This document shows positions 3,321 to 48,039 of a DNA stretch of 64,000 nt, piece after piece. The stretch lies in the IMG/VR virus record IMGVR_UViG_3300022839_000006, positions 124,001 through 188,000 of that record. The stretch is one strand, 5' to 3'. The translations under genes were made by a program, and so were the position numbers. Each line of letters begins with the position of its first letter. Position 1 is the stretch's first letter. The notes below the pieces were generated by a model that worked only from the letters and a program-made list of their open reading frames with translations, was not told the origin of the DNA and made no database searches.

Positions 3321-5891
3321 TTATGTAATTAGGTATTGAAAGCCGGTTTCGGCAAGCACGACTGCGTCATCTTCTATGTAATCAGCAGCAACATCTAGGC
3401 CAATGTCAGTAATTCTAGGTGCTGGTAATGTTATATTTATTTCGATTATGTCTGTTTTTCCAAATTTAGTGAATAGTTTAAGTCCTGCAGGATGCATTAA
3501 TTCTTTGTATTCTTCTTGATATACGTTGGTCGATACATCAGTATTTATTTCGTATGAATAGTCCTGATAGTAGAAACTATCTTGTATGACCTTGTTGCTG
3601 TTAAGATGTGAAAAGAAGCTTACCCAACGACCTTCGGTTAAACCTTGGCTTCTTGCCGAAGCAATTCCCTCAGCATCGGGACTAGAATCAAGCAAAATGA
3701 ACAAGTCAGTATTTTCCTGATACCAAGTCTCTTTGACTAGCTGAGGCACAATTATATTCTTCCATCTGTCAACGATACCTTCACTTGCAGTGCCATCTGC
3801 AATCTTTTCAAATTGAAGAACGTCTAGTGAACCAAAATGTTCATTCTCGTCAATGTCCCCGTATGCAAAGCCATCATAATATATTGTTCTTAGAAATAGA
3901 TCAAGTTCCACAGATTTAAGATTGCTATCTACCGCACATTTTAAAAGTTCTACTGCAAACGTTCCACCTTGAGAAGCTGGTTTTGGTCGAATTGGTATTA
4001 CATTTTCTCTGTCTCTTTTTGTAATGTTATACAACCGAACAGTGGCATCGTCTCGATAAGCAAAGCCACTATCAATTATATCTAATTTTTCTATTTTGCC
4101 AGTAACTGTTTCAACAATCCCGTTTATTTTTGCATTGAGACCCATTGGTTGTGAATCGAGGTCTCTTGATATTGTGCTAATAGATATTGGTATTGAACCG
4201 TTTTCTTTAAATAGTGGTTGTGTTTGTACAAACGATTCAAAGGTAAGCTGAGTAACGTATATATTATTTCCCTCAACTTTTACTACTCTGCCTTTTACTT
4301 CAACTGTTGTGTTTATGCCATCAAAACTTTGTATTACTTTTGATTGTACGAGAGTGTCGTCTTCAAAAATAACAACACCAGCAACAGGAAGTGTCCGTAT
4401 AATTTGATCACGCAGATTAAATCTGCGTATGATATTCTCTCTAGCAACAACGAAGGTATCGCTGAAATATTCTGTCCCTGGATTAATATTTGCCAAAGCA
4501 GCGAGAACACCTATCGTAAACGTCTCTGGTACGAAAGCTACATTTAAACGTGTGCTCAACTTAGGGACTATGGAATTTACTCTAGTTCCACTCATTTCAA
4601 GCAGTGCGGGTGGTATCTGCGAATAATTTGACGAATTTATTGGAACGTCTAAATAATTTTCAATTGTGTCCACAATAACAGTAATGGTTTCGGTATCACT
4701 TATCGACCCTATATCAGCACTTGCAGAACTGTTAGTATCTGTAACGAATACAGGTTCTACCGTGATGTTGTCTATTCTGTCTAGAGTCGAAACATCATAA
4801 CCGCCTTCTAAGAAATACGTGGTCGGGTCTGCAATAGCTTCTGATGTTGTTGTGTCAAGTCTTAGTCCCACTGAAATGTTATTTTGTCCGATTATCGATG
4901 CTGTAACAGTTGTTCCATAGCTGTTAATTTGTTGAACATTTTCGCCTACAATAAATTTTATATCGACCGCGGCAGCTAATGGATCTGGATCTGCAAAAAA
5001 CAGAGATTGAGTGGAAATTTCGACGTCTGTATCTGAAGTAGTATAACCATAGCCGCCAGATACAATATCAAATACAATCTCGCCTGTAAGTTCGTCTGAA
5101 ACTTTTGTAACTCTGCCCTTTGCTCCATAACCAGTAGACGATTCTATTTCTATAATATCGCCAATTTGGTTATTGCTTCTAGGTGCATTAGTCACATCAA
5201 CAGTTTTAAGCGAACCATATACCCTGCCGTAAGTTGCATCGGGGTCGGCACTGTATATAACATCAAACCCTTTAAATTCGCCTCTTACATCACTCAAGAA
5301 AATGATGGGTATAATAGAATTTTGAATATTTACGAAGTAGACACTATCGACAAATGCTTCTGCTTGCGATTTATCTCCAAGTATTCTTTTGTTGACAATG
5401 TCGTTAAACGGAATGATACTATCAACTGCATGAAGTTGAATAAACGTACCTACCTTCCACTTGGATGATGACAGCCTCAGCATATCTTCTGAAGGATAAT
5501 AAATCTCTACTTCAGCGTCAAAAAACAACTTGAAGAACAGCTCTATGCCTTCTTTCGACCCTTTTCTGCGATATAGATCAAGTATGTTCTTTACAATAAA
5601 TCTTGTGTCTTCTTCAAAAAACAAACCGCTCAGAAACTTGTTCTTGAAGTATATAAGCATCCTTTCAAGAGTCGTATCAATGTTGCGATACTCATACATT
5701 CTTCGAGCATTGTATATCGATTGATTTTCTTCCGATTCAAGAAATTCATAATAGCCTTTGACGAGCTCTACGAGTTCTTTGCCTTCTTCTCTGTAGATTG
5801 CAGGAAACTGATTTTCTATGAGGTATGATATCTTTTTTGGTTCAGCAAATACGTAATCTGAAAGACGAATATCGTTTAGGTTTTCTGTCAT
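3321..5891 (-). CDS. gp7: Baseplate wedge initiator gp7-like
   Basis: N-terminal LYRRKGSKEGIELFFKLFF; C-terminal IQDSFYYQDYSYEI...HPAGLKLF; lies between gp6 and gp8. Confidence 0.8.
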   Translation of the reverse strand: MTENLNDIRLSDYVFAEPKKISYLIENQFPAIYREEGKELVELVKGYYEFLESEENQSIYNARRMYEYRNIDTTLERMLIYFKNKFLSGLFFEEDTRFIVKNILDLYRRKGSKEGIELFFKLFFDAEVEIYYPSEDMLRLSSSKWKVGTFIQLHAVDSIIPFNDIVNKRILGDKSQAEAFVDSVYFVNIQNSIIPIIFLSDVRGEFKGFDVIYSADPDATYGRVYGSLKTVDVTNAPRSNNQIGDIIEIESSTGYGAKGRVTKVSDELTGEIVFDIVSGGYGYTTSDTDVEISTQSLFFADPDPLAAAVDIKFIVGENVQQINSYGTTVTASIIGQNNISVGLRLDTTTSEAIADPTTYFLEGGYDVSTLDRIDNITVEPVFVTDTNSSASADIGSISDTETITVIVDTIENYLDVPINSSNYSQIPPALLEMSGTRVNSIVPKLSTRLNVAFVPETFTIGVLAALANINPGTEYFSDTFVVARENIIRRFNLRDQIIRTLPVAGVVIFEDDTLVQSKVIQSFDGINTTVEVKGRVVKVEGNNIYVTQLTFESFVQTQPLFKENGSIPISISTISRDLDSQPMGLNAKINGIVETVTGKIEKLDIIDSGFAYRDDATVRLYNITKRDRENVIPIRPKPASQGGTFAVELLKCAVDSNLKSVELDLFLRTIYYDGFAYGDIDENEHFGSLDVLQFEKIADGTASEGIVDRWKNIIVPQLVKETWYQENTDLFILLDSSPDAEGIASARSQGLTEGRWVSFFSHLNSNKVIQDSFYYQDYSYEINTDVSTNVYQEEYKELMHPAGLKLFTKFGKTDIIEINITLPAPRITDIGLDVAADYIEDDAVVLAETGFQYLIT

Positions 5892-33263: not shown

Positions 33264-34976
33264 TCAAGCGAAAAAGTCTTCCAACGTGTCAACCTTTGTG
33301 GCAGACCACCCCAATGAGTCGAGAATGTTTTGAATTGGATCTAGGAACACTTTTGAGAACTGCTTCTCTCTGTCAACGTAATTGTCTATTTCCATTTCAG
33401 CAGGAGGACTCTCAATGAACGATATTATATTTTCGCGAAGAGGATTCGGCAGCTTCAAGTACACGAACTTGATTTTGTCTCCTGACTGTATAAGAGGATA
33501 ACGATTGACGAGGTCATTGTCTACAGTCCACTTGTTTGATAGAAGACAACCACGGATGTGAATTGGACAGGCCTTTTTGTATATCGTCCTTGGATCAGCA
33601 TAGCCATCCACGTCGTTGGTCCCAGAGACCTTAGCTATGTGTTGAACAGACAAACCAAAAAACTCCTCCTTGAAGTCTCTTATAAATTCCTGTGTCTCAG
33701 ACTCGCCTTGCGTAACAATGATCTTAAACGCTTCAAAAAACTTCTTTCTACATATTTCTGGTGTAGAGCTTCTTGCCGCATCAATTCCCGTGACAGACAC
33801 CTTTGGCTCATCATAGTGAACACCCTCACTATTAAGAACATTTAATATGTATCGCTTCTTTGCAACAAAGATGGCCTTGTCTGCAATCTTTTCACGTTTC
33901 ATTTTCATTGCATTACGATATGCACCCATTCTTTCAGCTAAATCATCATACGCATCGTCAAGCAACGGCTCAATCTTTTCTTTGCACACTTTGTCAATAA
34001 AAGACTCGCCTTGCTCGCGCGTAACATTGACGGTTCCAAACACCTTTTCGACGAGTGGACCAAGATTGACATACACACTGTCTGTGTCGCAATACACACA
34101 ATAATCAACATCTGTCGTTTTGAGCACTTTGTTTACGTACATGTTAATTGCCTGTGCGGCCCACTTGGTGGAAAGCTGTCCTGACGTTGTAATGCCCTCA
34201 GCCATGTCACTAATGTAGTAGATAAAAAATGCGTTGGCTGTACTTCCATAAAGTCCGTTCATTAGAATCTTGATGGACATTTGGCTGTTGTGTAGCTGGG
34301 TTATCAGCTTTTTCAACCGTACAATTTCATCCTTCGTTGTTGCTATCTCAAGCTCAGACTCTGCCATGAGCATCTTTACTTTGATCTCTGCACGTTCGTC
34401 GTAGTATCCTTGAATGATCTGAGGAATGATCCCCTCACGTTCTTTAGAGAAGCAAGCTCCATTTGCTGCTACTGCATACTTGGTCGTGTTTTTGTAGTTG
34501 CCGTCTAGTACAATCTGTTGTGACACGTCCTCTTTTACGTTGTGTTGATATGTTTCTGGTGACATGTTGTATTGCATCATTAAGTGCGGATAAAGGCTGT
34601 TAAGGTCAAAGGACACAACCCAATCTTTCATTCCCTTTTGTGGGTCCTTTACATATCCACCAACGATGCCCCTTGCACTTTCCTCTGATGCAGATTTGAT
34701 GAATGGTACGCGTCCTTGATCCATTAGGGCTCTGAATATAGTGGTATCCCACAGTCCCACAGTTCCAAACGCCTCGTTAAAATTGACACCACTCTTGTAT
34801 GCAACAGTAAACGACAGTGCAAGAAGAGCTACTTGCTCTTCAAACATCTCAACAAGCCTCGTGTCATACAAGTTGTAATCCAATCCAAGCTGATAATATT
34901 CACGATCGGCAAGGTCGGAATACTTGCGATGCATTTCAAGCAACTGCTTGTCCGTTAGGTCCTTCATATCTTCCAT
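33264..34976 (-). CDS. gp43: Family B DNA polymerase gp43, C-terminal subunit (ExoIII + polymerase)
   Basis: YNLYD (ExoIII), DLNSLYP, K..MNGLYG, YCDTDS, KKRY, clamp-binding tail LEDFF; own GGAGA SD. Confidence 0.93.
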   Translation of the reverse strand: MEDMKDLTDKQLLEMHRKYSDLADREYYQLGLDYNLYDTRLVEMFEEQVALLALSFTVAYKSGVNFNEAFGTVGLWDTTIFRALMDQGRVPFIKSASEESARGIVGGYVKDPQKGMKDWVVSFDLNSLYPHLMMQYNMSPETYQHNVKEDVSQQIVLDGNYKNTTKYAVAANGACFSKEREGIIPQIIQGYYDERAEIKVKMLMAESELEIATTKDEIVRLKKLITQLHNSQMSIKILMNGLYGSTANAFFIYYISDMAEGITTSGQLSTKWAAQAINMYVNKVLKTTDVDYCVYCDTDSVYVNLGPLVEKVFGTVNVTREQGESFIDKVCKEKIEPLLDDAYDDLAERMGAYRNAMKMKREKIADKAIFVAKKRYILNVLNSEGVHYDEPKVSVTGIDAARSSTPEICRKKFFEAFKIIVTQGESETQEFIRDFKEEFFGLSVQHIAKVSGTNDVDGYADPRTIYKKACPIHIRGCLLSNKWTVDNDLVNRYPLIQSGDKIKFVYLKLPNPLRENIISFIESPPAEMEIDNYVDREKQFSKVFLDPIQNILDSLGWSATKVDTLEDFFA

Positions 34977-35070: not shown

Positions 35071-36117
35071 CTAGACAGAAAGTCCTCTACGCTGGATTTC
35101 TTCCAGCAAAACGTCCCTTCGTTTTACACACATTTCTCCATGTGTCAGTACATCATCGGGAAGGTCGCGCGATATTTTTACGTCCTTGGCTCCATCAGAA
35201 ATGAATCGGTGAGTATCAACTTTGTTTCCGTGCGCCTCATAAGAAAGCTTCTTTGTGCCAAGTACAATCGTAGCGACGTTATCAAGCTTGTATGACTGCA
35301 TCGTGCCGTACTTGTATCCGAACTTCTTAAATGCATTCATGTAATCGACAATGCTGATACCGCTAATTACGTATGTTTTTTGCATCTTATTGAACATCTC
35401 GAACGACCGTTCGCGAACATGTCCCCACGGCGAAAGTCGTTTGACAGCAGCCATTCCAAGTATGTTTTCAATTCTCTTTACAATATACGTGATGTCAAAC
35501 AGCTCGACGTTCCACCCCGTGACAACATCTGGATAGTCACTACACCACAAATCGACAAACCTGTTCAGCATGTCATACTCTGATTGACACTTGTGGTACT
35601 TGATCAATGAGGGATCAATTCCTGTTATAGTCTTTTCTGGATCGTAGTCTTTTGTACCAAACATGTAGTAATTAGACGATTTAGACGATTTAATTGCGAC
35701 AGACGTAATCTCGTTGTCTGCAGTCTCCATGTCAGGCTTCTTCTTGCTGATATCTACCTCGATGTCAAAGGTAAAGATGTTAATCAGCGAAGGATCAAAA
35801 TCAATGGTACCAGGATACATGTCATATGTGAAAGACGCGACGTAATTGGTATTCCCACACATGACCATGTTCTGAACGTCTTTGTACCTCTCCACAAATT
35901 CTGTTGCACGCTTCATGTCATCACACTGGATCGACTTCAATGGCCTGTCACCTATTAACGACACGTGCGATGGCTTTTGGTCCTCATTCTGACGATCCTC
36001 TACGTAGAATGTAGGCTGATACTTGACCTTCTTGTAGAACCGTTTGCCGTTGTCATATCCTGTCCATAGGATATCATTTCCATAACGTTCGATCTTTGTG
36101 TACATCGTGTTGTTCAT
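35071..36117 (-). CDS. gp43: DNA polymerase gp43, N-terminal subunit (NTD + ExoI/II)
   Basis: FDIEV (ExoI), TGWNVELFDITY (ExoII), SYKLD.VA...LG..KL.Y, then a ~50-aa non-polymerase tail. Confidence 0.92.
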   Translation of the reverse strand: MNNTMYTKIERYGNDILWTGYDNGKRFYKKVKYQPTFYVEDRQNEDQKPSHVSLIGDRPLKSIQCDDMKRATEFVERYKDVQNMVMCGNTNYVASFTYDMYPGTIDFDPSLINIFTFDIEVDISKKKPDMETADNEITSVAIKSSKSSNYYMFGTKDYDPEKTITGIDPSLIKYHKCQSEYDMLNRFVDLWCSDYPDVVTGWNVELFDITYIVKRIENILGMAAVKRLSPWGHVRERSFEMFNKMQKTYVISGISIVDYMNAFKKFGYKYGTMQSYKLDNVATIVLGTKKLSYEAHGNKVDTHRFISDGAKDVKISRDLPDDVLTHGEMCVKRRDVLLEEIQRRGLSV

Positions 36118-39561: not shown

Positions 39562-42500
39562 TTAGGTTGTTGTCAACATCTTCTCTTTGAGATACGCTAC
39601 GAACCGTTCCGCATAAAGAACCAGTCCATCACCTACTAAAAGATGAGCATATCGCTCGTCGTACACTTCACTCATTGTTGCGCTTGGAAACACGACTGCA
39701 GGTCCTTGACTTGTTATGTCATAAAGCTCTTCGGGCAGTTTACCTTGTTGTAGAGCCTCTTGAAAATCGACATATTCAATTTCATTCGTTTCCACATCTA
39801 CAATAGGGATCATTCCGTCCCTGAATATAAATGTGGTTGTTGGCGCAAAGTTGTCCATTAACTGTTCCGTAATGTAATTTTTGAAGGTAGATACCTTGTT
39901 ATTATTACAGTATACACCCTCAGCCAAGTGTTTGTCAACGTTTTGTTTTGTGGCTAACTCAACTTCGTACACTTGCTGAATGCGCAACTGCGCAGGCGGA
40001 TTGAACACGCACCATTCAGGCGATCTGATACCACCACCTGCTCCAGGGACACCTGCAACCTGATAGTCTGTTCTTTTTTCCCCAAGGTTGACGTCCATCG
40101 AGAACAAATAGCCCTTTTGGCCTGCACGTCTTGAGTAACCGCCGTTAGAAACATATTGTAGCGCTTTGTCGACCTTGTTGCTGAAATATATACCGTCACC
40201 AAGCATTCTACCAACAACGCCTGAATCAGAAGGCTTGATGACTCTGAACCCATATCTCAATATCATTGATGCTGCAACACCACCTGTACCATGGTAAGCA
40301 GGTTCTACTGTTCCATCACCAAACTTGTTTTTGCGGAAGTCGTCAAACAGAGGGTTGTCTGTTGTTCCGTCATATACGTTTAGAATCTTAGGAAACACAT
40401 CGCCATGCTTTCCTGCATGATCTCTTTGAATAATGGTTTTGTTCAGCGCATTAACGTTTATAGTATCGTTTTTTGCAATCTCCGGTTCGGGAAGAATTGT
40501 CCCTTTCCGAGCAATTGTAGCTTTTGCGCGTGCAAAGAACTGTGTATACGTCTCGCCCTTCTTTTTCTTTGATACTGCGCCTGATACAATTGCAGACAAA
40601 TCAATGTCGTTGTATAAAAACAGCTGCTTTAATCTATTGTTATCGATTTTATCGAACGGTTTAATCTCTCCGCTAGAAATTTCATCTATCAAAACTTGCG
40701 AGCCGACAAGTGACATTCTAATCTTCTGTACAACATGAGGTGCGAGCCCATCGATGATGTCATTGACATAATCTTCGACATCTGTGCCAATAGTGTCAAG
40801 AATGATTCCTGTTAACACTTCAACATATTTACCTTTCTCGTCTTTGCGGATGCTTTTATACAGTCCTACACTCATAATGTATTTCTTCTGTGAGGATTTT
40901 GCGAATCTCATCCACTCTAATACTGTCTCTGATGTTGCACTTGAAAGAAGGTTCATGATAGTATCGCCACCCTTTGACGTATCAAAATCAAAACCGGTGT
41001 CTTTCTTTGCAACGATCAGTGACGCTTTGGCCAAAGCGTCACTGATCTTGTCTTTATCACCAGGCGCATATTTTGCGACACTTAGATTGCTGTAGAAACT
41101 GTTTCTTGATTCAAGGAAGTCTACTAACACTTGTGTATCAAGATCCCCAACGCCGTCACGTCGAACCTTCACTCCCACTAGTGCCTCATCGTTGGGGAAT
41201 TTAGCCATCATTTGATCAAGATCAATGTTAAGCACTCTAACAACTTTGACAGTTTTATCTACATTATATATACTATTTGAACCTATTAATTTGCCTATCA
41301 ACGACTTTTCAAAACCTACATCTACAAGGTCCGCTGCATAGCGGTCGTGCAGCAGCTCAAAGAGCATGCCGCCGTTTTGAGGAGCCTGTGTATCATACAC
41401 CTCTCCCTTTCTGAATTCTTCAAACAATTTTGGAACGATAGAAGCCTCATAGGTAGAAAACAAATCAGCTTGAATGAAGTGTTGAGCCATCTTCTCAATA
41501 CGGTCCATCGTTGACTGTTTAAGTCTCGTAGTTACATCGGTAACTTTTGATCTACTGTCTCCTGATACTATAAGCAATTCTATAAAATTTGCCTGCGACG
41601 CTCCAACAGTCACTGTATCGTTGTACACAGTTGATAAGAAATCTATCGGCTGTGCAGCAACAAATTCCACCAGCATCTGGTCATAATATCTTCCATATTG
41701 GATATCACCACTAGGATACGATCGCGTTAAGCCATTAAATGTGTTTTGAATAAGCATTTTGCTTGAGATTTCCGGATCAGAAACAATGAACGATATCAAT
41801 CTTTGTTTTTGTTTTTCCTGAACAGTGTTTTTGTATACATCTGATAGAAGAGAACTATAAAATTCACCTATATTGATTATACGCTTTATTAGTGGATCTT
41901 TTGCCTCTATTTCAAGTGCAGCGTTTATAAACGCTGCAACAGATGATTTGCGATAGGACGCCATTTTACCACTACTGTATATCTGATCGACGAACATTTC
42001 AAGAAAACCAATTGGCGTATATTTAGTCTTCCGTACAGCATTAGCTTGTTTAAGCACTGGTGTAAAATCTTGGGAGGTGTCACGATCTCTAAAAGCTTCA
42101 ATATAATTTTCAACGTTAGTCACAGTTTTATATATTGCTTCAAATGCTTGGCGAGGTGCATCAGGTAAATTATCAGCATAAATCAAGGTATCTGCAAGAT
42201 TGTATTTTGTTTTAACAAATTTAAGGGCCGCTGCTGCAAGTGCATCACTTTGATACATACCGTCCACGTGTATATCTACAAGGAGCTTTATGCCCTCATC
42301 AATCAATTGATCTATGTCGATGTTACTTGCAACTAATGTCTGCGCTGCCTCTCTTTCCTTCTGATCAATAGCAGCCTGAGCATCACGTGCCTTCTGATCA
42401 ATAGCAGCCTGAGCATCAATCGCTTGTTGTGCTTGTTGTGCTTGTTGTGCAGCAGCTTGTTTAATCTGTTTTTGACGTTGATAATAACCCAGCTTCGGTG

Positions 42501-43281
42501 CTGTAGGCGCAGGAACAGCAGGGTCAACAGGCGCACCTGTCAGTGCCGCAAGCTTCTTCAGTTTTTGACGTTGATAATAGTTCATTGGTGGTGCAACAGC
42601 AGGTGTTGTAGTGACCTGAGCTGACGGATCAACAATTGGTGTTGGCACTGTAGGAGCTGCAGGTACCGCAGCTGTGGCCATAGGAGACACTCCAGCAGGC
42701 TGCGGTGTTATTTCTGTCAATCCAAAGAATCTCTTGGCATATTTTTGATAGTCACCACCACCATCAACTGTATTGACTCTCTTCTTCAATTGAACAGCAA
42801 ATCTGGAAACATCAACAGCCGTTCCGCCACCACCTACGAAATCATCAAATACTTGACGCATCTTTGCATCTTTAATATTCAATCGGAAACTTGGAACCAT
42901 CCCTCTAAGCCATCCTGCAACAACGTTCGAGTCAATAGAATCGATTTGGCCTGATTTCAACTTGAAAAGGAATTTTGTTATTTCGTTTGCTGTGATGTCC
43001 TGCTTGAAGAATCCTGCCTCATGAGCCAACTTCACGGACAATGAAATGTCATGGTTATCATCGCCGATTGATCCAAGACGTACCTGTTTGTCTTTGCGCA
43101 AGAACTTGATAATTGTTCCACGTTGGGTAGGGCTCGTTGCGTTAATCATCCCCAGCATTCCGAGAAAGTTAAACATGAAAGCAGCAGCAACTCGATCTTT
43201 ATCTGCGAGTAACGCAGCTCTTTCTGCATCGTTAGAGTAAAGAGAATTTTCCCCAAGAAAAGATTTGAAGTTTTTGGTCAT
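39562..43281 (-). CDS. Large putative virion-packaged protein with PARP-like (H-Y-E) ADP-ribosyltransferase domain
   Basis: YHGT...GF...G.MLGDGIYFS...KALQY...V.LG...EWCVF; late promoter GATAAATA at 43320-43327; start MTKNFKSFLGE. Confidence 0.8.
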   Translation of the reverse strand: MTKNFKSFLGENSLYSNDAERAALLADKDRVAAAFMFNFLGMLGMINATSPTQRGTIIKFLRKDKQVRLGSIGDDNHDISLSVKLAHEAGFFKQDITANEITKFLFKLKSGQIDSIDSNVVAGWLRGMVPSFRLNIKDAKMRQVFDDFVGGGGTAVDVSRFAVQLKKRVNTVDGGGDYQKYAKRFFGLTEITPQPAGVSPMATAAVPAAPTVPTPIVDPSAQVTTTPAVAPPMNYYQRQKLKKLAALTGAPVDPAVPAPTAPKLGYYQRQKQIKQAAAQQAQQAQQAIDAQAAIDQKARDAQAAIDQKEREAAQTLVASNIDIDQLIDEGIKLLVDIHVDGMYQSDALAAAALKFVKTKYNLADTLIYADNLPDAPRQAFEAIYKTVTNVENYIEAFRDRDTSQDFTPVLKQANAVRKTKYTPIGFLEMFVDQIYSSGKMASYRKSSVAAFINAALEIEAKDPLIKRIINIGEFYSSLLSDVYKNTVQEKQKQRLISFIVSDPEISSKMLIQNTFNGLTRSYPSGDIQYGRYYDQMLVEFVAAQPIDFLSTVYNDTVTVGASQANFIELLIVSGDSRSKVTDVTTRLKQSTMDRIEKMAQHFIQADLFSTYEASIVPKLFEEFRKGEVYDTQAPQNGGMLFELLHDRYAADLVDVGFEKSLIGKLIGSNSIYNVDKTVKVVRVLNIDLDQMMAKFPNDEALVGVKVRRDGVGDLDTQVLVDFLESRNSFYSNLSVAKYAPGDKDKISDALAKASLIVAKKDTGFDFDTSKGGDTIMNLLSSATSETVLEWMRFAKSSQKKYIMSVGLYKSIRKDEKGKYVEVLTGIILDTIGTDVEDYVNDIIDGLAPHVVQKIRMSLVGSQVLIDEISSGEIKPFDKIDNNRLKQLFLYNDIDLSAIVSGAVSKKKKGETYTQFFARAKATIARKGTILPEPEIAKNDTINVNALNKTIIQRDHAGKHGDVFPKILNVYDGTTDNPLFDDFRKNKFGDGTVEPAYHGTGGVAASMILRYGFRVIKPSDSGVVGRMLGDGIYFSNKVDKALQYVSNGGYSRRAGQKGYLFSMDVNLGEKRTDYQVAGVPGAGGGIRSPEWCVFNPPAQLRIQQVYEVELATKQNVDKHLAEGVYCNNNKVSTFKNYITEQLMDNFAPTTTFIFRDGMIPIVDVETNEIEYVDFQEALQQGKLPEELYDITSQGPAVVFPSATMSEVYDERYAHLLVGDGLVLYAERFVAYLKEKMLTTT
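42358..42418. repeat. 28-bp direct repeat (33-nt period) in the ART gene linker
   Basis: CTTCTGATCAATAGCAGCCTGAGCATCA occurs twice, encoding DAQAAIDQK twice. Confidence 0.85.
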
Positions 43282-43350
43282 TGTGCACGGTATCCTTGTG
43301 AAAGCTGGTGTGTCTTGCTTATTTATCAAAACACTCCAGCTTCGACTCTT

Positions 43351-43729: not shown

Positions 43730-44056
43730 TTACATTGTGCGTGCTACACTCGAAAGCTTCTGGTAGTATGTTGCTGCTGTGCCGCGTGACACGCCTTGCT
43801 TGACTGCAAGGTCGATCACGTCTTTGCGACGAAGCAAACCGTAGTTTGCTTGAAAGATTTGACGAAATTCAGCAACAGGAGATACAATCGAGGACGATAC
43901 AGGTGAATCTTTTTTTGTCTTTGCTTTTGCAGGAAGTGTGACAAGAATTTTACCGCCATCGCGTTTGGTGAAAATGGGCTGTACCAAGCCTGCGCGAACT
44001 GCACCGCGCTTTGCACTTGACATTGAGGTGTATGTTTTTTCAAAGTTCTTAGTCAT
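43730..44056 (-). CDS. Basic hypothetical protein, possibly DNA-binding
   Basis: C-terminal RKDVI..AV..GV...TA.TYYQ HTH-like segment. Confidence 0.55.
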   Translation of the reverse strand: MTKNFEKTYTSMSSAKRGAVRAGLVQPIFTKRDGGKILVTLPAKAKTKKDSPVSSSIVSPVAEFRQIFQANYGLLRRKDVIDLAVKQGVSRGTAATYYQKLSSVARTM

Positions 44057-44145
44057 TTTTATGTTCCGTTTATTTGTTGCTGTTTGCTTACCTTTATAAG
44101 CTAGCGCCAAGCAAATAGAATGGCAACAATGTTTTTGGAACATTC

Positions 44146-44643
44146 TTAACTAATTTCTACCAGACTGACTTTTATCTGTTTTTCACCTCTGAGTTGAGCA
44201 GCGACGACAGCATGGTGCCCATCACTTATGAAGAACCTCCCAGCATACTTAACAACATGGATGTGGTTAGGGTTTGTGTTTGTGATCTTGTCGCGTAGCT
44301 TTTCAACGTCGTTTGTCATGACGTATGGCTGTGTGGCAACCAACTGACTGATGTTCAATGTGGTCTGTTTGTTCATCTTGTCGTACTGACGCTGGCCTTC
44401 ATCTCTCACCTTCTTATCTACGTCTTCCATTCCCAACTCCATCTGCAAGTCATATAGTGCCTCTGCTGCCTGACTTGAAAGTTTTTCATCGAAGGACGTA
44501 AGGGGGATGTGACCTCCCTTTGGGACCTTCTCCCATGTGCCAAAGCTTGAACGTGTGCCGTATCTACGTGATGCACGCTGCGCGAGCCTTACAGGGTCCA
44601 CCTTACGTTCAAATAATTGACAAAATTGTGTAAAAAGTATCAT
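44146..44643 (-). CDS. ParB/Srx-like domain protein
   Basis: I..L.ATQ and I.VV...G..FI.DGHH...A. Confidence 0.7.
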   Translation of the reverse strand: MILFTQFCQLFERKVDPVRLAQRASRRYGTRSSFGTWEKVPKGGHIPLTSFDEKLSSQAAEALYDLQMELGMEDVDKKVRDEGQRQYDKMNKQTTLNISQLVATQPYVMTNDVEKLRDKITNTNPNHIHVVKYAGRFFISDGHHAVVAAQLRGEKQIKVSLVEIS

Positions 44644-44726
44644 TTTGTTGTTGACCTGCTTGTGAAAATAGGGATAATAGAGTTATGGCTCTGGATATAA
44701 GAGGCTATAGTAGGTGCTGAGGTGGT

Positions 44727-45060
44727 TTAGTTTAGGTCGATGTTGAACACTTTGAATGGAAATTGTTCAGAAGAATATATCTCAATTCGCTTCTTAAAGT
44801 GGTCTAATGTATAGTTAGTGTATGCGCCATGGGTGATATCATCAGCAATGTCATACAGTGTAGCTTCGTCAGCATTGTTACCCTTTCTTAGCACTCTACC
44901 AATGGATTGAAGAATACGAACTTCTGATTTTGATCCTGAGGCGAGAATTAGATTATCAAGCCGCTTGATCGACACACCTGTGGAGAAATGTTCCATACGA
45001 AGCAAGTATATTGTGATTCTTAACAGCGTATGACCTCCGTTCTATTTTAGTCGGTTTCAT
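44727..45060 (-). CDS. uvsW: UvsW helicase C-terminal part (contains a +1 frame discontinuity at 44985-44988)
   Basis: ATG at 45060 with GAGGA SD gives MKPTKIERRSYAVKNHNILASYGTF; the +1 frame continues STGVSIKRLDN...LQSIGRVLRK. Confidence 0.8.
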
Positions 45061-46201
45061 TTATAATTTCCTCTATTTTATGTTCATATCCATTTAACAT
45101 ACCGTATCTTTCACAATATATCTTTATGATGTTGTGTAAATTTTCAATCGAAGTTCTATACCACCCTCTATCTGTAAGAGGATCCTTGCTAACTTTATTT
45201 TTTAGTTTATACGCTTTAATAATTTTTATTTCTATACGTTTTGCAAGTTCTGTATTTGGAGTTTTAGTATTTAATTTTCTGGAGTATTTTCCGTATGTTT
45301 TTATTATTTCATCATCAGCTAAATCTTCTAATAGATGTATCATGTCACTTGGTATTTTATTTCTTATATGACTTATTTTTCTGCTTTTTAGTGTTCTTTC
45401 TTTGTAATTTGGATCTTTCCAAAGTTCTGAAATGGCAGATCCATCAGAACCTCTGTATTTCCTATTTTTCATTTTTTCTATAAAGACTTCATCATTTTTC
45501 CAAAGACTTTTTAATTTTTTAGAAGCTTGTTCTTTTTTCTCTTTTGATCCATTTATTTTTTTCATAGTATTTTTGAAATTGTTAAAATCGCTTTCGGACA
45601 TTTCAGAATATCTCTTATTCAGCGCATCTGAATATCTTTGTGTACCATTTATTATATTATACTCTATCATGTCTTTTGATTTTTGCTCTCGTCTTTCAGG
45701 TATCCACCACCTTTTTAATTGCTCTGATTTTTTAACACGATTTTCTGGAGAATTGCCAATGGCAGACATATTTTTAGAATGCCCATTGAGCATTTGTGCT
45801 CTGGCAATGTTTCTTCTTTTTTCTCTCCAGTCTTCATATTTTGGAGACTTTTTAAATTCTATCCACGCATTTTTTGTCGCCGTTGATATTATTTTTCTAT
45901 ATTCTTTTGATTCTCTGGTAGTTTTAGGAAGCATAAAGTTTAATGGTCTCGTAAATCTCCTTATTGGATACGCTTTTGACAATAGAAAATGTGCTTCCAC
46001 GTGATCGGTATATGTTAAAGCATATACTAAATCATTTGCGTATATACATCGTGGAATTATATGGTGATCTTCACAATATAATTCTGATGAAATCTTGTCT
46101 GTTTTATTTTCAAGAACAAAATCTATATATTTTTCTAGTGTAGACTCGTCTGATGGATCACCCAAAAGTTCAACAAATTTATCAAATATGATCTTTTCCA
46201 A
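45047..46201 (-). mobile_element. HNH (MobE-like) homing endonuclease inserted in uvsW
   Basis: HHIIPRC...LT..DH..AH.LL.K.Y; Lys-rich C-terminus; visibly AT-rich; own late promoter GATAAATA (46223-46230) and AAGGAG SD. Confidence 0.85.
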
Positions 46202-46242
46202 TATAATACTCCTTATAGGTATTATTTATCAAAGATGACATT

Positions 46243-47595
46243 TCAACCGCCATTAGCTTTATTTTTTATCCAATTTTCGGAAATGTCAGAATTTTCGGTT
46301 ATATTTTTTCCTAAACAGACAGATCCGTCAGTAAGAATTACTTGTTCATCTTCTTCTATTTCAAGTTTATGTTCACCGAAAAAAAGAACTACCATTGTTT
46401 TGTTATCATTTTCGATTAAATGTCGAATTCGTTCTCGTTCTTCTCCTTTGGTATCTCCGTAGATGAAGTGAAGATTTGTATCTGGGCTTTCAAGCATTGG
46501 AGCAAGAACCTTACCATGCTTCTCTACAAGTTCAAACAAAATAAGATTGTTCTGACCTTTGAGTGACCATACGAGATTGCGTATGAATGTGTTTCTCTTA
46601 CTGCTATTTATGATGAACTCGCGCTCTGCATGGTAACGCTCTTCTTTTTTCAGCTTCTTAATTGCCTTTGAGAACGTTGACCGTGTCTGTGCAGGATGTT
46701 TGAGAACAATTGCTTTGACATTAAATGTTGCAACTGTACCACTATCAATTAGGTCCTTTGTCGATACATATCTCTTAACATTTCCAAATAGTCCTGTCAA
46801 GATTAAAACGTGTGTTTTAGAATCAGAGGAGATGGTACCAGTAAAGCCAAATCTGTAGGGAGCTTCAGTGCATTTTTCCATGATCTGGGTAAGCGACTTG
46901 CCTGTAAACAAATGTGCCTCATCACCCATCACAACGCGGAATTGGTCAAACCACTCCTTTTGTAACGGTCCTAACGACTGCCATGTTGATATTACAATTT
47001 GTGCCGAGGTGTTTTTATCAACACCCCCTTGGATCTTGTATATCAAACTTGGATCACAGCCATAATCGATGAAGTCTCCTGCCATCTGATGTACAAGGGA
47101 AATTGTTGGGACAATTATTAGAACACGGTGTTGAAAGGCAGAAATGTAGTGGTGAGATATTAAATACTGCATGAACGATTTGCCACTAGAAGTTGGCGAA
47201 AGAGATAGGGTTCTCTTTTTACGAATGGCATTAACAATGTAGTCGTTTTGATACTCACGAAGCTCGAGCTTCGTCCCTGTTTCTTTTGCTAGTTGGTATC
47301 CGTAGTCATCAGGAACATTTGGTTCGTCGCATATTTCTTTGTCTACAATCAGATCATACGATCTGATTTCACAAAATTGTCGAAGCTGATCGATTAGACC
47401 TATGTGGAGATAAGGCTTGAATGGGGTGATCAGGCGAATGTACCCATCCCAAACCTTCGCCTTGTACTTCGGTGAGAATTGATAGTTTGCAGGTTGGAAG
47501 GCAAAGAATTCCATCAACTCTTGCATTATGCTCACATCAGCGATTACCTTCATGTGAACTTCGTTCATTTTCTCAACTCGAATTGTATCAGTCAC
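46243..47595 (-). CDS. uvsW: UvsW helicase N-terminal part
   Basis: LREYQ, SPTSSGKS, DEAH, GFTGT; ends with a ~53-aa foreign extension after ...IEND. Confidence 0.93.
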   Translation of the reverse strand: MTDTIRVEKMNEVHMKVIADVSIMQELMEFFAFQPANYQFSPKYKAKVWDGYIRLITPFKPYLHIGLIDQLRQFCEIRSYDLIVDKEICDEPNVPDDYGYQLAKETGTKLELREYQNDYIVNAIRKKRTLSLSPTSSGKSFMQYLISHHYISAFQHRVLIIVPTISLVHQMAGDFIDYGCDPSLIYKIQGGVDKNTSAQIVISTWQSLGPLQKEWFDQFRVVMGDEAHLFTGKSLTQIMEKCTEAPYRFGFTGTISSDSKTHVLILTGLFGNVKRYVSTKDLIDSGTVATFNVKAIVLKHPAQTRSTFSKAIKKLKKEERYHAEREFIINSSKRNTFIRNLVWSLKGQNNLILFELVEKHGKVLAPMLESPDTNLHFIYGDTKGEERERIRHLIENDNKTMVVLFFGEHKLEIEEDEQVILTDGSVCLGKNITENSDISENWIKNKANGG

Positions 47596-47601
47596 GGTAT
47601 A

Positions 47602-48039
47602 TTAATAGCCTCCGTTTTGGAATTTCTGAAAGTCGATCATGTTCTTTATGATGAAGTTTCTGTTATTTATCTGCTTGATTACATCTTCAAGAAACTTAGC
47701 CATTCCTGTATAGTAATCGATCTGTAGGGACAATTTAATTACCTCCTTGTCAGAGTGAATATATTTATCCATGTCGCTCCGAAGTATTTTCAAAGGGTTT
47801 GGCTTCCACCCACGCTCCTTCAAATCTTCCATGGCCATCGTACCGTTGTAATATTCTATCTTGTCCTTCTCAAGGACCTTTAGGTCCGCTTTAAGTTTAT
47901 TAGCTTTCATTACAGCACGGTAGTATATTTTATAGTATTTTGCGTGTAGTCCAGGGATCTTCCCCGACTCTTGCGACAAGTTAGTTTCGTTTATTGTTGC
48001 GTCTTGGGCCCACATCTCTTCATATTTTTCAATGTCCAT
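47602..48039 (-). CDS. uvsY: Recombination mediator UvsY
   Basis: W..D..I, LH.KY, YY.G, R.F.IKN.I...KF..G. Confidence 0.92.
   Translation of the reverse strand: MDIEKYEEMWAQDATINETNLSQESGKIPGLHAKYYKIYYRAVMKANKLKADLKVLEKDKIEYYNGTMAMEDLKERGWKPNPLKILRSDMDKYIHSDKEVIKLSLQIDYYTGMAKFLEDVIKQINNRNFIIKNMIDFQKFQNGGY

What the first reader, a model, noticed from the sequence alone, without database searches (positions are those of the whole stretch)
44727..46410. uvsW fractured by an HNH endonuclease that appears to bring its own intein-derived, non-splicing adaptor
Seen: uvsW-N ends ...IEND plus NKTMVVLFFGEHKLEIEEDEQVILTDGSVCLGKNITENSDI..., resembling the block-B-to-end part of a Hint IntN but lacking Cys1 and TxxH. 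uvsW-C starts MKPTKIERRSY, like the first strand of an IntC, with no Asn-Cys/Ser/Thr junction. The tail looks as AT-rich as the endonuclease, and the uvsW-C start and SD lie inside the endonuclease 3' end. Known: fractured genes use true split inteins, and Aeh1 mobE splits nrdA with none. Inference: a third strategy, in which a mobile cassette supplies a dead mini-intein as a heterodimerisation clasp; it parallels the gp43 split.
Basis: partly seen in the sequence, partly recalled or inferred. Interest (0 to 1): 0.82.

Follow-up and report, generated by a model that had tools for sequence, protein, structure and literature searches.

The report
Endonuclease-split uvsW needing a frameshift
A selfish endonuclease cassette has cut this phage's UvsW helicase gene in two, adding an intein-like tail and a short head to the two pieces. 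It also leaves one extra base in the second piece, so that piece can be made only if ribosomes shift frame, much as in the T4 gene 60 bypass.

Summary
The split is real. On the minus strand, uvsW-N plus a 53-aa tail (47595-46243), a MobE-like HNH endonuclease (46201-45047) and a restart at ATG 45060 (MKPTKIERRSY) replace 168 nt of a 95%-identical phage that has an intact 496-aa UvsW.

After Phe25 (TTT 44988-44986) an extra C (44985) forces a +1 shift. The same gap sits at the same codon in at least 8 divergent metagenomic lineages. Sister clades carry an 11-nt gap (TCG-TGA...TCG) or an in-frame TAG-AAC at the same spot.

The tail is a conserved family. Four lines of evidence place it on Hint block B with the TxxH residues lost:
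- AlphaFold models of two members, pLDDT about 91.
- Foldseek, where inteins are the only low-rmsd hits.
- hhalign against an intein profile, P = 3e-4, 0 of 300 permutations as good.
- ESM Atlas features.

The head is too short to test.

The concept is not new. Element-encoded assembly tails are known for Aeh1 MobE/NrdA and T4 MobA/gp39-gp60. The same uvsW element, without recoding, is in Dickeya phage LIMEstone1 (annotated as an intron) and in Vibrio phages.

What is new is the evidence for a Hint-like tail and the short recoding gaps. Translation across the gap and assembly of the fragments are inferred, not shown.

The parts
46405..47595 (-). uvsW-N proper (residues 1-397, through ...IEND): UvsW_N domain, RecA-like domain 1 and the first part of RecA-like domain 2
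   Evidence: Pfam UvsW_N, ResIII and DEAD. It is 95% identical over residues 1-397 to the intact UvsW of L003/L004.
46405..46507 (-). Left diverged tract. This is uvsW-coding sequence that came in with the element (...LAPMLESPDTNLHFIYGDTKGEERERIRHLIEND against ...LEPLLRKEGRVLHFIHGNVSGEERERIRDQIEND).
   Evidence: The roughly 95% nucleotide identity to L003 stops at window 46508.
46243..46404 (-). Tail, a C-terminal extension of 53 codons plus the stop: a Hint block-B-like mini-domain without the TxxH residues
   Evidence: Conserved family. AlphaFold pLDDT 91. Foldseek finds inteins. hhalign P = 3.4e-4. ESM Atlas neighbours are Hint families. No UvsW-HMM match.
45047..46201 (-). MobE-like HNH homing endonuclease gene: 384 aa, TTG start with AAGGAG upstream, in a different frame from the tail
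   Evidence: PHROG 655 and 12434. tblastn matches to mobE and homing endonucleases. 46% identical to the L008 endonuclease.
45070..45073 (-). Shine-Dalgarno-like GAGG, 9 nt before the head ATG and inside the endonuclease ORF
   Evidence: Read from the sequence.
45028..45060 (-). Head, the unique N-terminal extension MKPTKIERRSY (11 codons). Its ATG overlaps the endonuclease 3' end.
   Evidence: MKP.K[IV] is conserved in every lineage, including those found through the tail alone.
44986..45027 (-). Element-encoded replacement of the displaced uvsW codons (AVKNHNILASYGTF against parental PIKRHDILASFGTF), in the head frame
44985..44988 (-). Recoding site TTT C: the Phe25 codon plus one extra base. 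A +1 shift (UUU to UUC) is needed to continue.
   Evidence: Supported by independent contigs.
44727..44984 (-). uvsW-C in the +1 frame (STGVSIKRLDN...NIDLN, 85 codons plus the stop): helicase motifs V and VI and the C-terminal part
   Evidence: PHROG 9690 helicase at 1e-29. 95% identical to L003 UvsW residues 411-496.
44962..44984 (-). Right diverged tract (STGVSIKR against STGTNLKK). High identity to the cassette-free allele resumes at 44961.
   Evidence: The Logan contig of run X4 carries the cassette-free allele and departs from the window exactly at 44961.
44956..44958 (-). TGA that ends the unshifted head ORF (34 aa)

Best explanation
This is a Mob-type homing-endonuclease cassette of the same kind as T4 MobA (genes 39/60) and Aeh1 MobE (nrdA-a/b). 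It entered uvsW just before helicase motif V by homing and replaced 168 nt with 1546 nt.

The cassette carries five things:
1. An in-frame 53-aa tail on UvsW-N. The tail is a degenerate Hint block-B module that cannot splice.
2. The HNH endonuclease gene.
3. A new ribosome-binding site and start codon, with an 11-aa basic head.
4. Its own copy of the 14 displaced uvsW codons.
5. A one-base coding gap after Phe25.

The likely mechanism, all inferred:
- UvsW is made as two polypeptides.
- The acidic tail and the basic head act as an assembly bracket that rebuilds RecA-like domain 2 without splicing.
- UvsW-C is made only by ribosomes that shift +1 at UUU_C, with tRNA-Phe re-pairing from UUU to UUC.
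- The extra base, like the 50-nt gap of T4 gene 60, probably breaks the endonuclease's target in the conserved motif-V DNA. That would make cassette-bearing genomes immune to cutting.

Shown here: the anatomy, the cassette boundaries, conservation of the tail, head and gap, and the Hint-like fold prediction.
For: Cassette and boundaries:
- Intact 496-aa UvsW in L003/L004 and P0001.
- Identity breaks at 46508 and 44961.
- A cassette-free allele is present in another salt-lake sample.

Mobility:
- Nearly identical cassettes (99% over the head region) sit in uvsW-C backgrounds with pS = 0.63.
- The cassette sits in UvsW backgrounds that are 36-95% identical to the L003 protein, always at the same site, and the helicase parts are intact in all loci but L013/L020 (one in-frame TAA in uvsW-N).

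Tail:
- It is open and, from the FG motif to the conserved Trp, aligns without gaps in 13 sequences, with F9, L24, I35, E37, D40 and W45 invariant.
- Hint-like by four methods.

Charge: tails run from -9 to 0, heads from +1 to +3.

Gap:
- The same +1 site is present in the window, L008, L010, L012, L013, L016, L036 and the L021-L026 clade, although the endonucleases are only 43-47% identical.
- The extra base is always C or T, so the +1 codon is still Phe.
- L008 has no start codon in the +1 frame before the motif-V Ser-Thr-Gly codons. The ATG or TTG there in other lineages is not conserved and has no SD.
- L013 and L016 share a nuclease-less, deeply diverged cassette (pS 0.54-0.64). They still keep uvsW-C in the +1 frame under constraint (pN 0.09, pS 0.87).
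- Sister clades have other gaps at the same spot, one with matched TCG...TCG codons and a stop right after the first.

Stability of the split state: cultured phages (Dickeya LIMEstone1, Vibrio 144E46.1) carry the same tail and head, and the Vibrio phages have no endonuclease left.

Precedents: PMC3045599, bioRxiv 10.1101/2022.08.31.505936, PMC11461880.
Against: - No experiment shows frameshifting, the two polypeptides or their association.
- No stimulator was found. There is no conserved RNA structure. The 0-frame A-site codon varies (CUC, UUC, CAG), and no stop follows the site.
- L024 carries the extra base two codons earlier, at a non-slippery GGA_A.
- L013 has an in-frame TAA in uvsW-N.
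- uvsW is dispensable in T4 (my own knowledge), so a dead gene could persist.
- Because the cassette homes, much of the apparent purifying selection on uvsW-C could date from before invasion.
- LIMEstone1 has an apparently intact endonuclease and no gap, so a gap is not generally needed for immunity.
- Hint similarity: Foldseek E-values are all above 0.01, hhalign probability is only 38%, and the Pfam and PDB sequence searches find nothing.
Confidence: 0.6

Rival explanations
1. uvsW is dead in these phages. In this reading the extra base (and the 6- and 11-nt gaps in sister clades) is only a scar that protects the cassette from its own endonuclease. It spreads by co-conversion, and UvsW-C is never translated.
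For: - The gap lies inside the co-converted block.
- The cassette is actively mobile.
- No frameshift stimulator was found.
- L013 has a nonsense codon in uvsW-N, and L024 has an odd gap position.
- uvsW is non-essential in T4 (my own knowledge).
Against: - The tail and head stay conserved in the gap-bearing lineages. That is pointless if the second fragment is not made.
- uvsW-N and uvsW-C are full-length and free of other lesions in all assessable loci but one.
- L013 and L016 keep uvsW-C constrained although their cassette has lost its nuclease domain and diverged to saturation.
- The extra base always keeps a Phe codon in the +1 position.
- The 11-nt gap has matched flanking codons plus a stop, chance about 7e-4 by my estimate.
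Confidence: 0.25
2. The gene is in three pieces. UvsW-C starts on its own at an internal codon in the +1 frame (ATG 44996 or TTG 45005 in the window, giving MEHFSTG...), and the 34-aa head ORF is a separate small peptide.
For: An ATG and a TTG exist in the +1 frame of the window just before the shift. Clade B has a GTGA stop/start overlap.
Against: - These starts are by-products of the Tyr-Gly (TAT GGN) and Leu/Val-Ala (NTT GCN) codons. L008 has none, and no lineage has an SD in front of one.
- Such a product would lack the beta-strand ILASYG of RecA-like domain 2.
Confidence: 0.08
3. The insert is removed by splicing, either as a group I intron (as annotated for I-LimI in LIMEstone1) or as a working intein, giving a contiguous UvsW.
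For: LIMEstone1 ORF123 was annotated 'putative intron' (PMC3296691). The insert length of 1377 nt is a multiple of three, and the tail and head are in the same frame.
Against: - No Rfam intron model matches, even at E = 10.
- The tail is conserved as protein and ends at a stop in every lineage.
- The endonuclease is in another frame.
- There is no Cys/Ser at position 1, no TxxH, and no HN followed by Cys/Ser/Thr.
- The Vibrio phages have two abutting ORFs with an ATGA overlap and nothing to splice.
Confidence: 0.04

Closest known systems
T4 MobA element: gene 39 / mobA / gene 60 with the 50-nt translational bypass (bioRxiv 10.1101/2022.08.31.505936; structure PMC11461880)
   Same: - An HNH endonuclease sits inside a conserved replication gene.
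- A conserved in-frame C-terminal extension of about 44-53 aa is added to the upstream fragment.
- The downstream fragment gets an N-terminal extension made of a unique part plus an element-encoded copy of the displaced codons.
- A coding gap follows directly and must be recoded.
- Near-identical cassette-free relatives exist.
- Some variants have lost the endonuclease but keep the split.
- The T4 gp39 extension aligns to the same Hint block-B columns (P = 0.0034).
   Different: - The target gene is uvsW, not the topoisomerase.
- The gap is 1 nt (a +1 shift). Sister clades have 6 or 11 nt, not 50 nt.
- No take-off hairpin or stop follows the shift codon in the window.
- The unique part of the head is 11 aa, not about 30.
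- Direct tail-to-gp39-extension similarity is weak.
Aeh1 MobE-split nrdA with element-derived tails (PMC3045599)
   Same: A MobE-like HNH endonuclease splits an enzyme inside a catalytic domain. The tails come from the insertion and are needed for activity. A degenerate-intein origin and an electrostatic interaction between the tails were proposed there.
   Different: No recoding is reported for nrdA-b. Hint similarity of the NrdA tails was a suggestion without evidence. Function is shown biochemically for NrdA and is untested for UvsW.
Dickeya phage LIMEstone1 ORF124 / I-LimI / ORF122 (PMC3296691) and Vibrio Ackermannviridae such as 144E46.1
   Same: It is the same element family at the same uvsW site. 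The tail is homologous (...LEFGNISIMVGDNEKVLLSNGETKVAMFVTEEDDVDDNWIK) and so is the head (MKPTKINKAED..., MKPTKVVHKQG...).
   Different: Their uvsW-C is one uninterrupted ORF with no coding gap. The LIMEstone1 insert was annotated as an intron. The Vibrio phages have lost the endonuclease.
Fractured genes with split inteins and an endonuclease between the halves (PMC2677866)
   Same: The layout is host-N plus a Hint-N-like piece, then an endonuclease gene, then a short piece plus host-C. The two pieces have complementary charge.
   Different: All splicing residues are absent. Only about 40 residues, the block-B region, are Hint-like. Blocks A, F and G are missing, so no trans-splicing is possible.
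+1 frameshifting on UUU_C (influenza PA-X UCC_UUU_CGU; cited from my own knowledge, not checked here)
   Same: P-site tRNA-Phe can re-pair from UUU to UUC.
   Different: There is no conserved rare A-site codon here, and this is a bacterial system. Efficiency is unknown.

Membership tests
Intein / Hint protein-splicing domain | Cys/Ser/Thr nucleophile at the first residue of the insert | tested here: not met
   The first insert residue is Asn. Other family members have N, S, T, K or Q at varied positions, and none has a conserved nucleophile.
Intein / Hint protein-splicing domain | Block B TxxH | tested here: not met
   The aligned columns read E-E-D-E in the window, against T-E-D-H in the intein row shown, and vary across the tail family.
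Intein / Hint protein-splicing domain | C-terminal His-Asn followed by Cys/Ser/Thr | tested here: not met
   The head has no such junction. 'KNHN-I' is native UvsW sequence and is present in uninterrupted relatives.
Intein / Hint protein-splicing domain | Hint fold | tested here: inconclusive
   About 40 residues of the tail match the block-B half. AlphaFold pLDDT is 91. Intein hits have TM 0.58-0.70 at rmsd 1.2-2.1 A. hhalign gives P = 3.4e-4. ESM Atlas neighbours are Hint families. Blocks A, F and G are missing, and all Foldseek E-values are above 0.01.
Homing-endonuclease 'genes in pieces' with element-encoded assembly tails (MobA/gp39-gp60, MobE/NrdA) | A free-standing HNH endonuclease gene inside a conserved gene, with cassette-free close relatives | tested here: met
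Homing-endonuclease 'genes in pieces' with element-encoded assembly tails (MobA/gp39-gp60, MobE/NrdA) | A conserved in-frame C-terminal extension, and an N-terminal extension whose start overlaps the endonuclease 3' end | tested here: met
Homing-endonuclease 'genes in pieces' with element-encoded assembly tails (MobA/gp39-gp60, MobE/NrdA) | An element-encoded copy of the displaced host codons | tested here: met
   AVKNHNILASYGTF against parental PIKRHDILASFGTF. The diverged tracts are 46507-46405 and 44984-44962.
Homing-endonuclease 'genes in pieces' with element-encoded assembly tails (MobA/gp39-gp60, MobE/NrdA) | The fragments assemble into an active enzyme and the tails are required | not testable with these tools
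   This needs co-expression, pull-down and helicase assays. The only indirect support is persistence of the split in cultured LIMEstone and Vibrio phages.
Programmed ribosomal +1 frameshift / short bypass | A conserved shift site at which the P-site tRNA can re-pair | tested here: met
   UUU followed by C or U in all +1 lineages but one. The exception is L024.
Programmed ribosomal +1 frameshift / short bypass | The new frame encodes the conserved, constrained product, and no other route to it exists | tested here: inconclusive
   uvsW-C is intact in the +1 frame in every locus and is constrained in the L013/L016 pair. L008 has no +1-frame start before motif V. Homing confounds the selection test.
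Programmed ribosomal +1 frameshift / short bypass | Stimulatory signals (slow A-site codon or stop, nearby SD, RNA structure) | tested here: not met
   RNAalifold finds no conserved structure. The A-site codon varies. The SD-like GGAGG lies about 48 nt upstream. Clades B and C do have a stop right after the last in-frame codon.
Programmed ribosomal +1 frameshift / short bypass | A trans-frame protein is observed | not testable with these tools
   No RNA or protein data. The runs found hold DNA contigs only.
Group I intron with a homing endonuclease | A conserved catalytic RNA core | tested here: not met
   cmscan of 44000-48000 at E up to 10 finds no intron family. The flanks of the endonuclease are conserved as protein.

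The most novel reading that the evidence does not exclude
Mob-type endonuclease cassettes would then share a general toolkit with two parts. One part is a pair of tails that descend from a decayed (split) intein, with the Hint block-B module kept as a non-covalent clasp in both the uvsW tail and the T4 gp39 extension. The other is a short translational recoding gap (1, 6 or 11 nt here, 50 nt in T4) placed in the most conserved codons of the target, which blocks self-cleavage while still letting the host protein be made. That would make the T4 gene 60 bypass one end of a family of natural 'coding gaps' rather than a unique oddity.
Probability: 0.45. Interest if true: 0.85.

Novelty: new variant of a known kind. 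Interest (0 to 1): 0.74.

Why it matters
Translational bypass linked to a homing endonuclease has been known only from T4 gene 60 and its direct homologues. The 2022 survey of that element says the bypass cassette 'remains unique'.

A second, unrelated target gene with the same cassette logic but much shorter gaps would give a simple, graded series for study: a +1 slip, a 6-nt gap with a stop, and an 11-nt hop with matched codons. That series could show how such recoding arises and what it is for.

The Hint-like fold of the tail is the first direct evidence for the 2010 suggestion that these assembly tails are remnants of inteins. It links three ways of surviving an endonuclease invasion: splicing inteins, split inteins and non-splicing clasps.

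Cultured carriers of the same element exist (Dickeya LIMEstone phages, Vibrio Ackermannviridae), so the clasp can be tested at the bench. Annotators should also stop calling these inserts introns, and should not call uvsW-C a pseudogene or a 92-aa orphan.

Tried and rejected
- **Tail as a decayed duplicate of the uvsW motif V region.** tblastn and PHROG alignments ran a few residues into the tail. An HMM of 119 close UvsW proteins scores the tail at -2.7 bits, no better than shuffles. Rejected.
- **'KNHN|I' as an intein C-terminus.** Rejected, because it is native UvsW sequence.
- **Group I intron.** No Rfam hit.
- **Sequence-level Hint detection.** Pfam at E = 10, phmmer against PDB and a tail profile against PDB all found nothing.
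- **Word-index protein search restricted to the tail.** Nothing found. The exhaustive phmmer search was needed.
- **Megablast of the locus against GenBank phages.** No match.
- **Head as an IntC strand.** Adding the head to the tail profile does not raise the hhalign score: 23.2, against a permuted-head mean of 23.3.
- **Direct homology of the tail to the T4 gp39 extension.** Probability 4% with protein comparison, and only P = 0.004 over 21 columns locally. Left open.
- **Conserved RNA structure at the shift site.** None.
- **A tRNA in the window that might read four bases.** No tRNA genes in the window.
- **Promoter and terminator scan.** Promoter-like sites are at chance level, and the four terminator-like hits are all on the + strand.
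- **dN/dS as proof of function.** Weakened by evidence of recent homing into diverged backgrounds. Only the L013/L016 pair is usable.
gp43 is split (35071-36117 and 33264-34976) but has no endonuclease and unrelated tails that look helical by eye.
Full report
**Anatomy.** All features are on the minus strand.
- A 450-codon ORF (47595-46243) is UvsW residues 1-397 (Pfam UvsW_N, ResIII, DEAD) followed by 53 extra codons.
- After 41 nt comes a 384-codon ORF (46201-45047). It matches phage homing-endonuclease and HNH families (PHROG 655 at 2e-10, PHROG 12434 at 4e-8). By tblastn it finds only distant (<40% identity) genes annotated mobE or homing endonuclease.
- Inside its last codons, an ATG at 45060 preceded by GAGG (45073-45070) opens MKPTKIERRSYAVKNHNILASYGTF.
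- That ORF then runs out of frame and stops after 34 codons, at 44958-44956.
- The rest of UvsW (STGVSIKRLDN...QSIGRVLRKG...NIDLN, 85 codons, 44984-44727) is in the +1 frame.

It missed that uvsW-C is broken by one extra base.

**What the insert replaced.**
- IMG/VR holds two contigs identical to the window (L001, L002, from different metagenomes).
- It also holds two contigs, L003 and L004, whose UvsW is 95% identical over residues 1-397 and is an uninterrupted 496-aa protein reading ...IENDPIKRHDILASFGTFSTGTNLKKLDN....
- P0001, from a 264-kb contig, is closer still and also intact.
- Nucleotide identity of about 92-95% stops at window 46508 and resumes at 44961. In between, 1546 nt of the window stand in for 168 nt of L003.
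- The block therefore contains about 100 nt and about 23 nt of diverged uvsW coding sequence on its two sides, which are co-conversion tracts. It also contains the tail, the endonuclease, the head and its own version of the 14 displaced codons.
- Aligned to L003 (GGA ACT TTT TCA ACA GGT), the window reads GGA ACA TTT C TCC ACA GGT. The extra base is C 44985.
- Logan contigs of four salt-lake metagenome runs were laid on the stretch. One covers all of it with no difference. A second sample covers 44936-45111, which includes the site, with no difference. A third carries the cassette-free allele and departs from the window exactly at 44961.
- The frameshift is therefore real DNA, and both alleles circulate.

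**The tail is a conserved family.**
- An exhaustive phmmer search of the 53-aa tail against 1.8 billion proteins found three proteins that carry a 42-48% identical tail. P0126 is a distant 451-aa UvsW-N fragment with the tail at the same position. P0125 and P0124 are shorter pieces.
- A back-translated scan of IMG/VR with the tail alignment returned 19 loci.
- In all of them the tail follows a full-length uvsW-N, whose identity to the L003 protein ranges from 36% to 95%.
- Thirteen tails align without a single gap from hhLxFG to the conserved Trp. Invariant positions are F9, L24, I35, E37, D40 and W45.
- An open frame of 53 codons in DNA of this composition has a probability of about 0.007.
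- The tail is not a decayed copy of the uvsW sequence it displaces. A UvsW HMM scores it no better than shuffles.

**Is the tail Hint-like?**

Sequence searches say nothing: Pfam, phmmer against PDB and a tail profile against PDB all came back empty.
1. AlphaFold2 folds the tail alone with pLDDT 91.4 and pTM 0.70, as four strands and a helix. A second family member, 37% identical, gives pLDDT 91.7 and the same elements.
2. Foldseek against PDB gives no significant E-value for so small a query. Even so, 10 of the top 25 hits are Hint-fold domains, mostly inteins, and they include all the hits with low rmsd: VidaL (TM 0.64, 1.2 A), Npu DnaE IntN (0.65, 1.9 A over 45 columns), MchDnaB-1, NrdJ-1 split, Mtu RecA and a BIL domain. 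The replicate model repeats this. Against viral models, the best hits (probability 1.0, TM about 0.7, rmsd 1.3 A) include viral topoisomerase, polymerase, DnaB and terminase entries of the kind that often host inteins (two are named as intein-containing). They also include the UvsW fragment of a Dickeya phage and fragments of split Campylobacter and Aeromonas phage proteins.
3. hhalign of the tail profile against a profile of 105 inteins (collected) aligns tail residues 1-39 to intein columns 51-88, which is block B and the strand-turn-helix after it. With 7 tails the score is 19.3 (P = 0.0026), and 1 of 300 column permutations reaches it. With 13 tails it rises to 22.8 (P = 3.4e-4), 0 of 300 permutations reach it, and z = 6.9.
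4. ESM Atlas features: most of the 100 nearest named clusters are PT-HINT, Hint, Intein_splicing, Hint_2 or Vint.

In the alignment the Thr and His of TxxH are E and E in the window and vary across the tail family. So the tail most likely is, or mimics, the block-B module of a Hint domain and cannot splice.

The head cannot be judged. Adding it to the profile leaves the score unchanged.

The T4 gp39 C-terminal extension aligns to the same intein columns (P = 0.0034, z about 4, though the best of 200 shuffles scored higher). Its direct similarity to the uvsW tails is weak.

**The coding gap is conserved.**
- L008 was found through the tail alone. Its endonuclease is only 46% identical, yet it has the same head (MKPTKIERR...) and the same extra base: GGT ACC TTT C TCA ACT GGT.
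- A scan for the head DNA pattern, together with the tail-based scan, gave further lineages. All carry one extra base directly after the Phe codon of G-T/V-F|S-T-G:
  - L010: TTT T TCA
  - L012 = L028: GTC TTT C AGT
  - L013 = L020: TTT C AGC
  - L016: TTT C TCC
  - L036: TTT C TCA
  - L021-L023, L025 and L026: TTT C TCA
- The extra base is always a pyrimidine, so the +1 codon is again Phe.
- The Ser codon after it switches between TCN and AGY while Ser-Thr-Gly is kept.
- The +1 frame then runs through a complete uvsW-C of 84-89 codons in every locus.
- L008 has no ATG, GTG or TTG in the +1 frame before the motif-V Ser-Thr-Gly codons. The ATG or TTG found there in other lineages is a by-product of the Tyr-Gly or Leu/Val-Ala codons and has no SD.
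- Two sister clades have different gaps at the same place:
  - L027 and L029-L031 read GCA TCC TCG TGA ATG AT TCG GGN ACC TTC. That is 11 nt flanked by identical TCG codons, with a stop directly after the first, which is the take-off, stop and landing logic of T4 gene 60 in miniature. By my own estimate such an arrangement has a chance of about 7e-4. A GTGA overlap would also allow a restart.
  - L034 and L035 read TCC TAT TAG AAC GGA ACC TTC, an in-frame stop plus one codon.
- L021 and L022 have lost the endonuclease but keep the tail, head and shift.
- L024 is an exception, with the extra base two codons earlier (GGA A ACA TTC AGT).
- No conserved RNA structure surrounds the site, and no tRNA gene lies in the window.

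**Is the split, shifted gene functional?**

The evidence is indirect.
- For function:
  - The tail and head remain conserved in gap-bearing lineages.
  - The helicase parts are intact in all assessable loci but one.
  - L013 and L016 share a cassette whose endonuclease has lost the HNH domain and has diverged to near saturation (pS 0.54-0.64). They still keep uvsW-C in the +1 frame with pN 0.09 against pS 0.87.
- Against function:
  - L013 has a TAA inside uvsW-N.
  - The cassette is clearly mobile. L027 and L029 have 99% identical head regions in uvsW-C backgrounds with pS 0.63, so constraint on the flanks may predate invasion.
- The split state is stable in viable phages:
  - Dickeya phage LIMEstone1 and 18 related records carry a homologous tail, an endonuclease (I-LimI) and a head MKPTKINKAED... 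at the same site. Their uvsW-C is uninterrupted.
  - 51 Vibrio phage records, including the Ackermannviridae phage 144E46.1, carry the tail. In 144E46.1, the one inspected, it is directly followed, with an ATGA overlap, by MKPTKVVHKQG...LLASYGCLSTG, without any endonuclease.

**Comparison with what is known.**
- The architecture matches point for point the MobA element described by Manning and Atkins (bioRxiv 10.1101/2022.08.31.505936). That element has an HNH gene and an out-of-frame conserved C-terminal extension of about 44 aa on gp39. On gp60 it adds an N-terminal extension made of a unique part plus a homologous replacement region, and then the bypass cassette. Cassette-free relatives 96-99% identical exist, and some lineages keep the split after losing the endonuclease. 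That paper states that the bypass 'remains unique', and that the gap protects against MobA nicking.
- For Aeh1, Crona et al. [quoted passage not shown] They suggested the tails could be remnants of a degenerate intein acting electrostatically.
- The T4 topoisomerase II structure shows the gp39 and gp60 extensions forming a roughly 70-aa 'pendant' that acts as an assembly bracket (PMC11461880).
- LIMEstone1's uvsW insert was published as a putative intron (PMC3296691).
- Its Hint reading of the tail now has evidence behind it. Here the tails are acidic (net -9 to 0) and the heads basic (+1 to +3), as in split inteins.

**Verdict.** This is a new variant of a known kind. It is a Mob-type cassette in uvsW with a Hint-like non-splicing tail and, in aquatic T4-like phages, a 1-nt coding gap (6 or 11 nt in relatives) that must be recoded.
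- The anatomy and its conservation are shown.
- Hint ancestry is probable (about 0.65).
- Productive +1 frameshifting (about 0.55), the clasp function and the immunity role are inferred by analogy and need the experiments listed.

Noticed in passing
window 35071-36117 (-) and 33264-34976 (-): The DNA polymerase gp43 is split into a 348-aa exonuclease part and a 570-aa polymerase part, 94 nt apart, with no endonuclease between them. The junction tails (...THGEMCVKRRDVLLEEIQRRGLSV* and MEDMKDLTDKQLLEMHRKYSDLADRE...) look helical by eye and are unlike the uvsW tail and head.
   Followed up: partly
L027, L029-L031 (IMG/VR), about 80 nt after the head ATG: There is an 11-nt coding gap at the same uvsW position: GCA TCC TCG TGA ATG AT TCG GGN ACC. 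The flanking TCG codons are identical and a stop follows the first, which is gene-60-like hop logic. A GTGA overlap could instead allow a restart.
   Followed up: partly
L034, L035 (IMG/VR): An in-frame TAG plus AAC is inserted between ...IIIASY and GTFSTG. This would need readthrough or a short hop. Whether these phages reassign TAG was not checked.
   Followed up: no
L024 positions about 1030-1045: This is a variant of the L021-L026 clade in which the extra base sits two codons earlier (GGA A ACA TTC AGT), at a site with no re-pairing potential. It could be a recombinant, a defective copy or an assembly chimera.
   Followed up: no
L013 (= L020/L014), uvsW-N codon after ...NTMTG: An in-frame TAA (ACT GGA TAA ATC) interrupts an otherwise full-length uvsW-N in the lineage whose endonuclease lacks the HNH domain.
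   Followed up: partly
L013 and L016, ORF between tail and head (about 179 aa): This endonuclease remnant has no HNH N-terminal domain, but its ORF is intact and constrained in both lineages (63% aa identity, pN/pS 0.33). It may keep a non-nuclease role.
   Followed up: partly
P0047 (632 aa); P0127 and P0128 (352-353 aa): Relatives of this UvsW carry a true mini-intein at a different site, the motif III region (...DDSK|CLDKN...LVHN|CHR). P0127 and P0128 look like UvsW-N fragments ending in a Hint-N half, so they may be genuine split-intein 'fractured' uvsW genes.
   Followed up: partly
L017 (T4) 3781-3945 (-), gp39 C-terminal extension: The T4 gp39 extension (...EWFTFELNGDTIIVNENDEVQINGKWITVGELRKNL) aligns to the same intein block-B columns as the uvsW tails (hhalign P = 0.0034), with NxxD in place of TxxH. 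The gp60 head begins MKFVKID, compared with MKPTKIE here.
   Followed up: partly
L021, L022 and L038 (Vibrio phage 144E46.1): The endonuclease has been cleanly lost while the tail and head ORFs now overlap or abut (an ATGA overlap in the Vibrio phage). These are 'hit and run' states like those described for MobA.
   Followed up: partly
window 46222-46229 (-): GATAAATA lies just upstream of the endonuclease ribosome-binding site and resembles the T4 late-promoter box TATAAATA. That resemblance is from my own knowledge. The generic sigma-70 scan was at chance level.
   Followed up: no
window 39562-43329 (-): A 1255-aa ORF has an Ala/Pro/Gln-rich repetitive stretch near residues 230-330. It was not analysed.
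   Followed up: no
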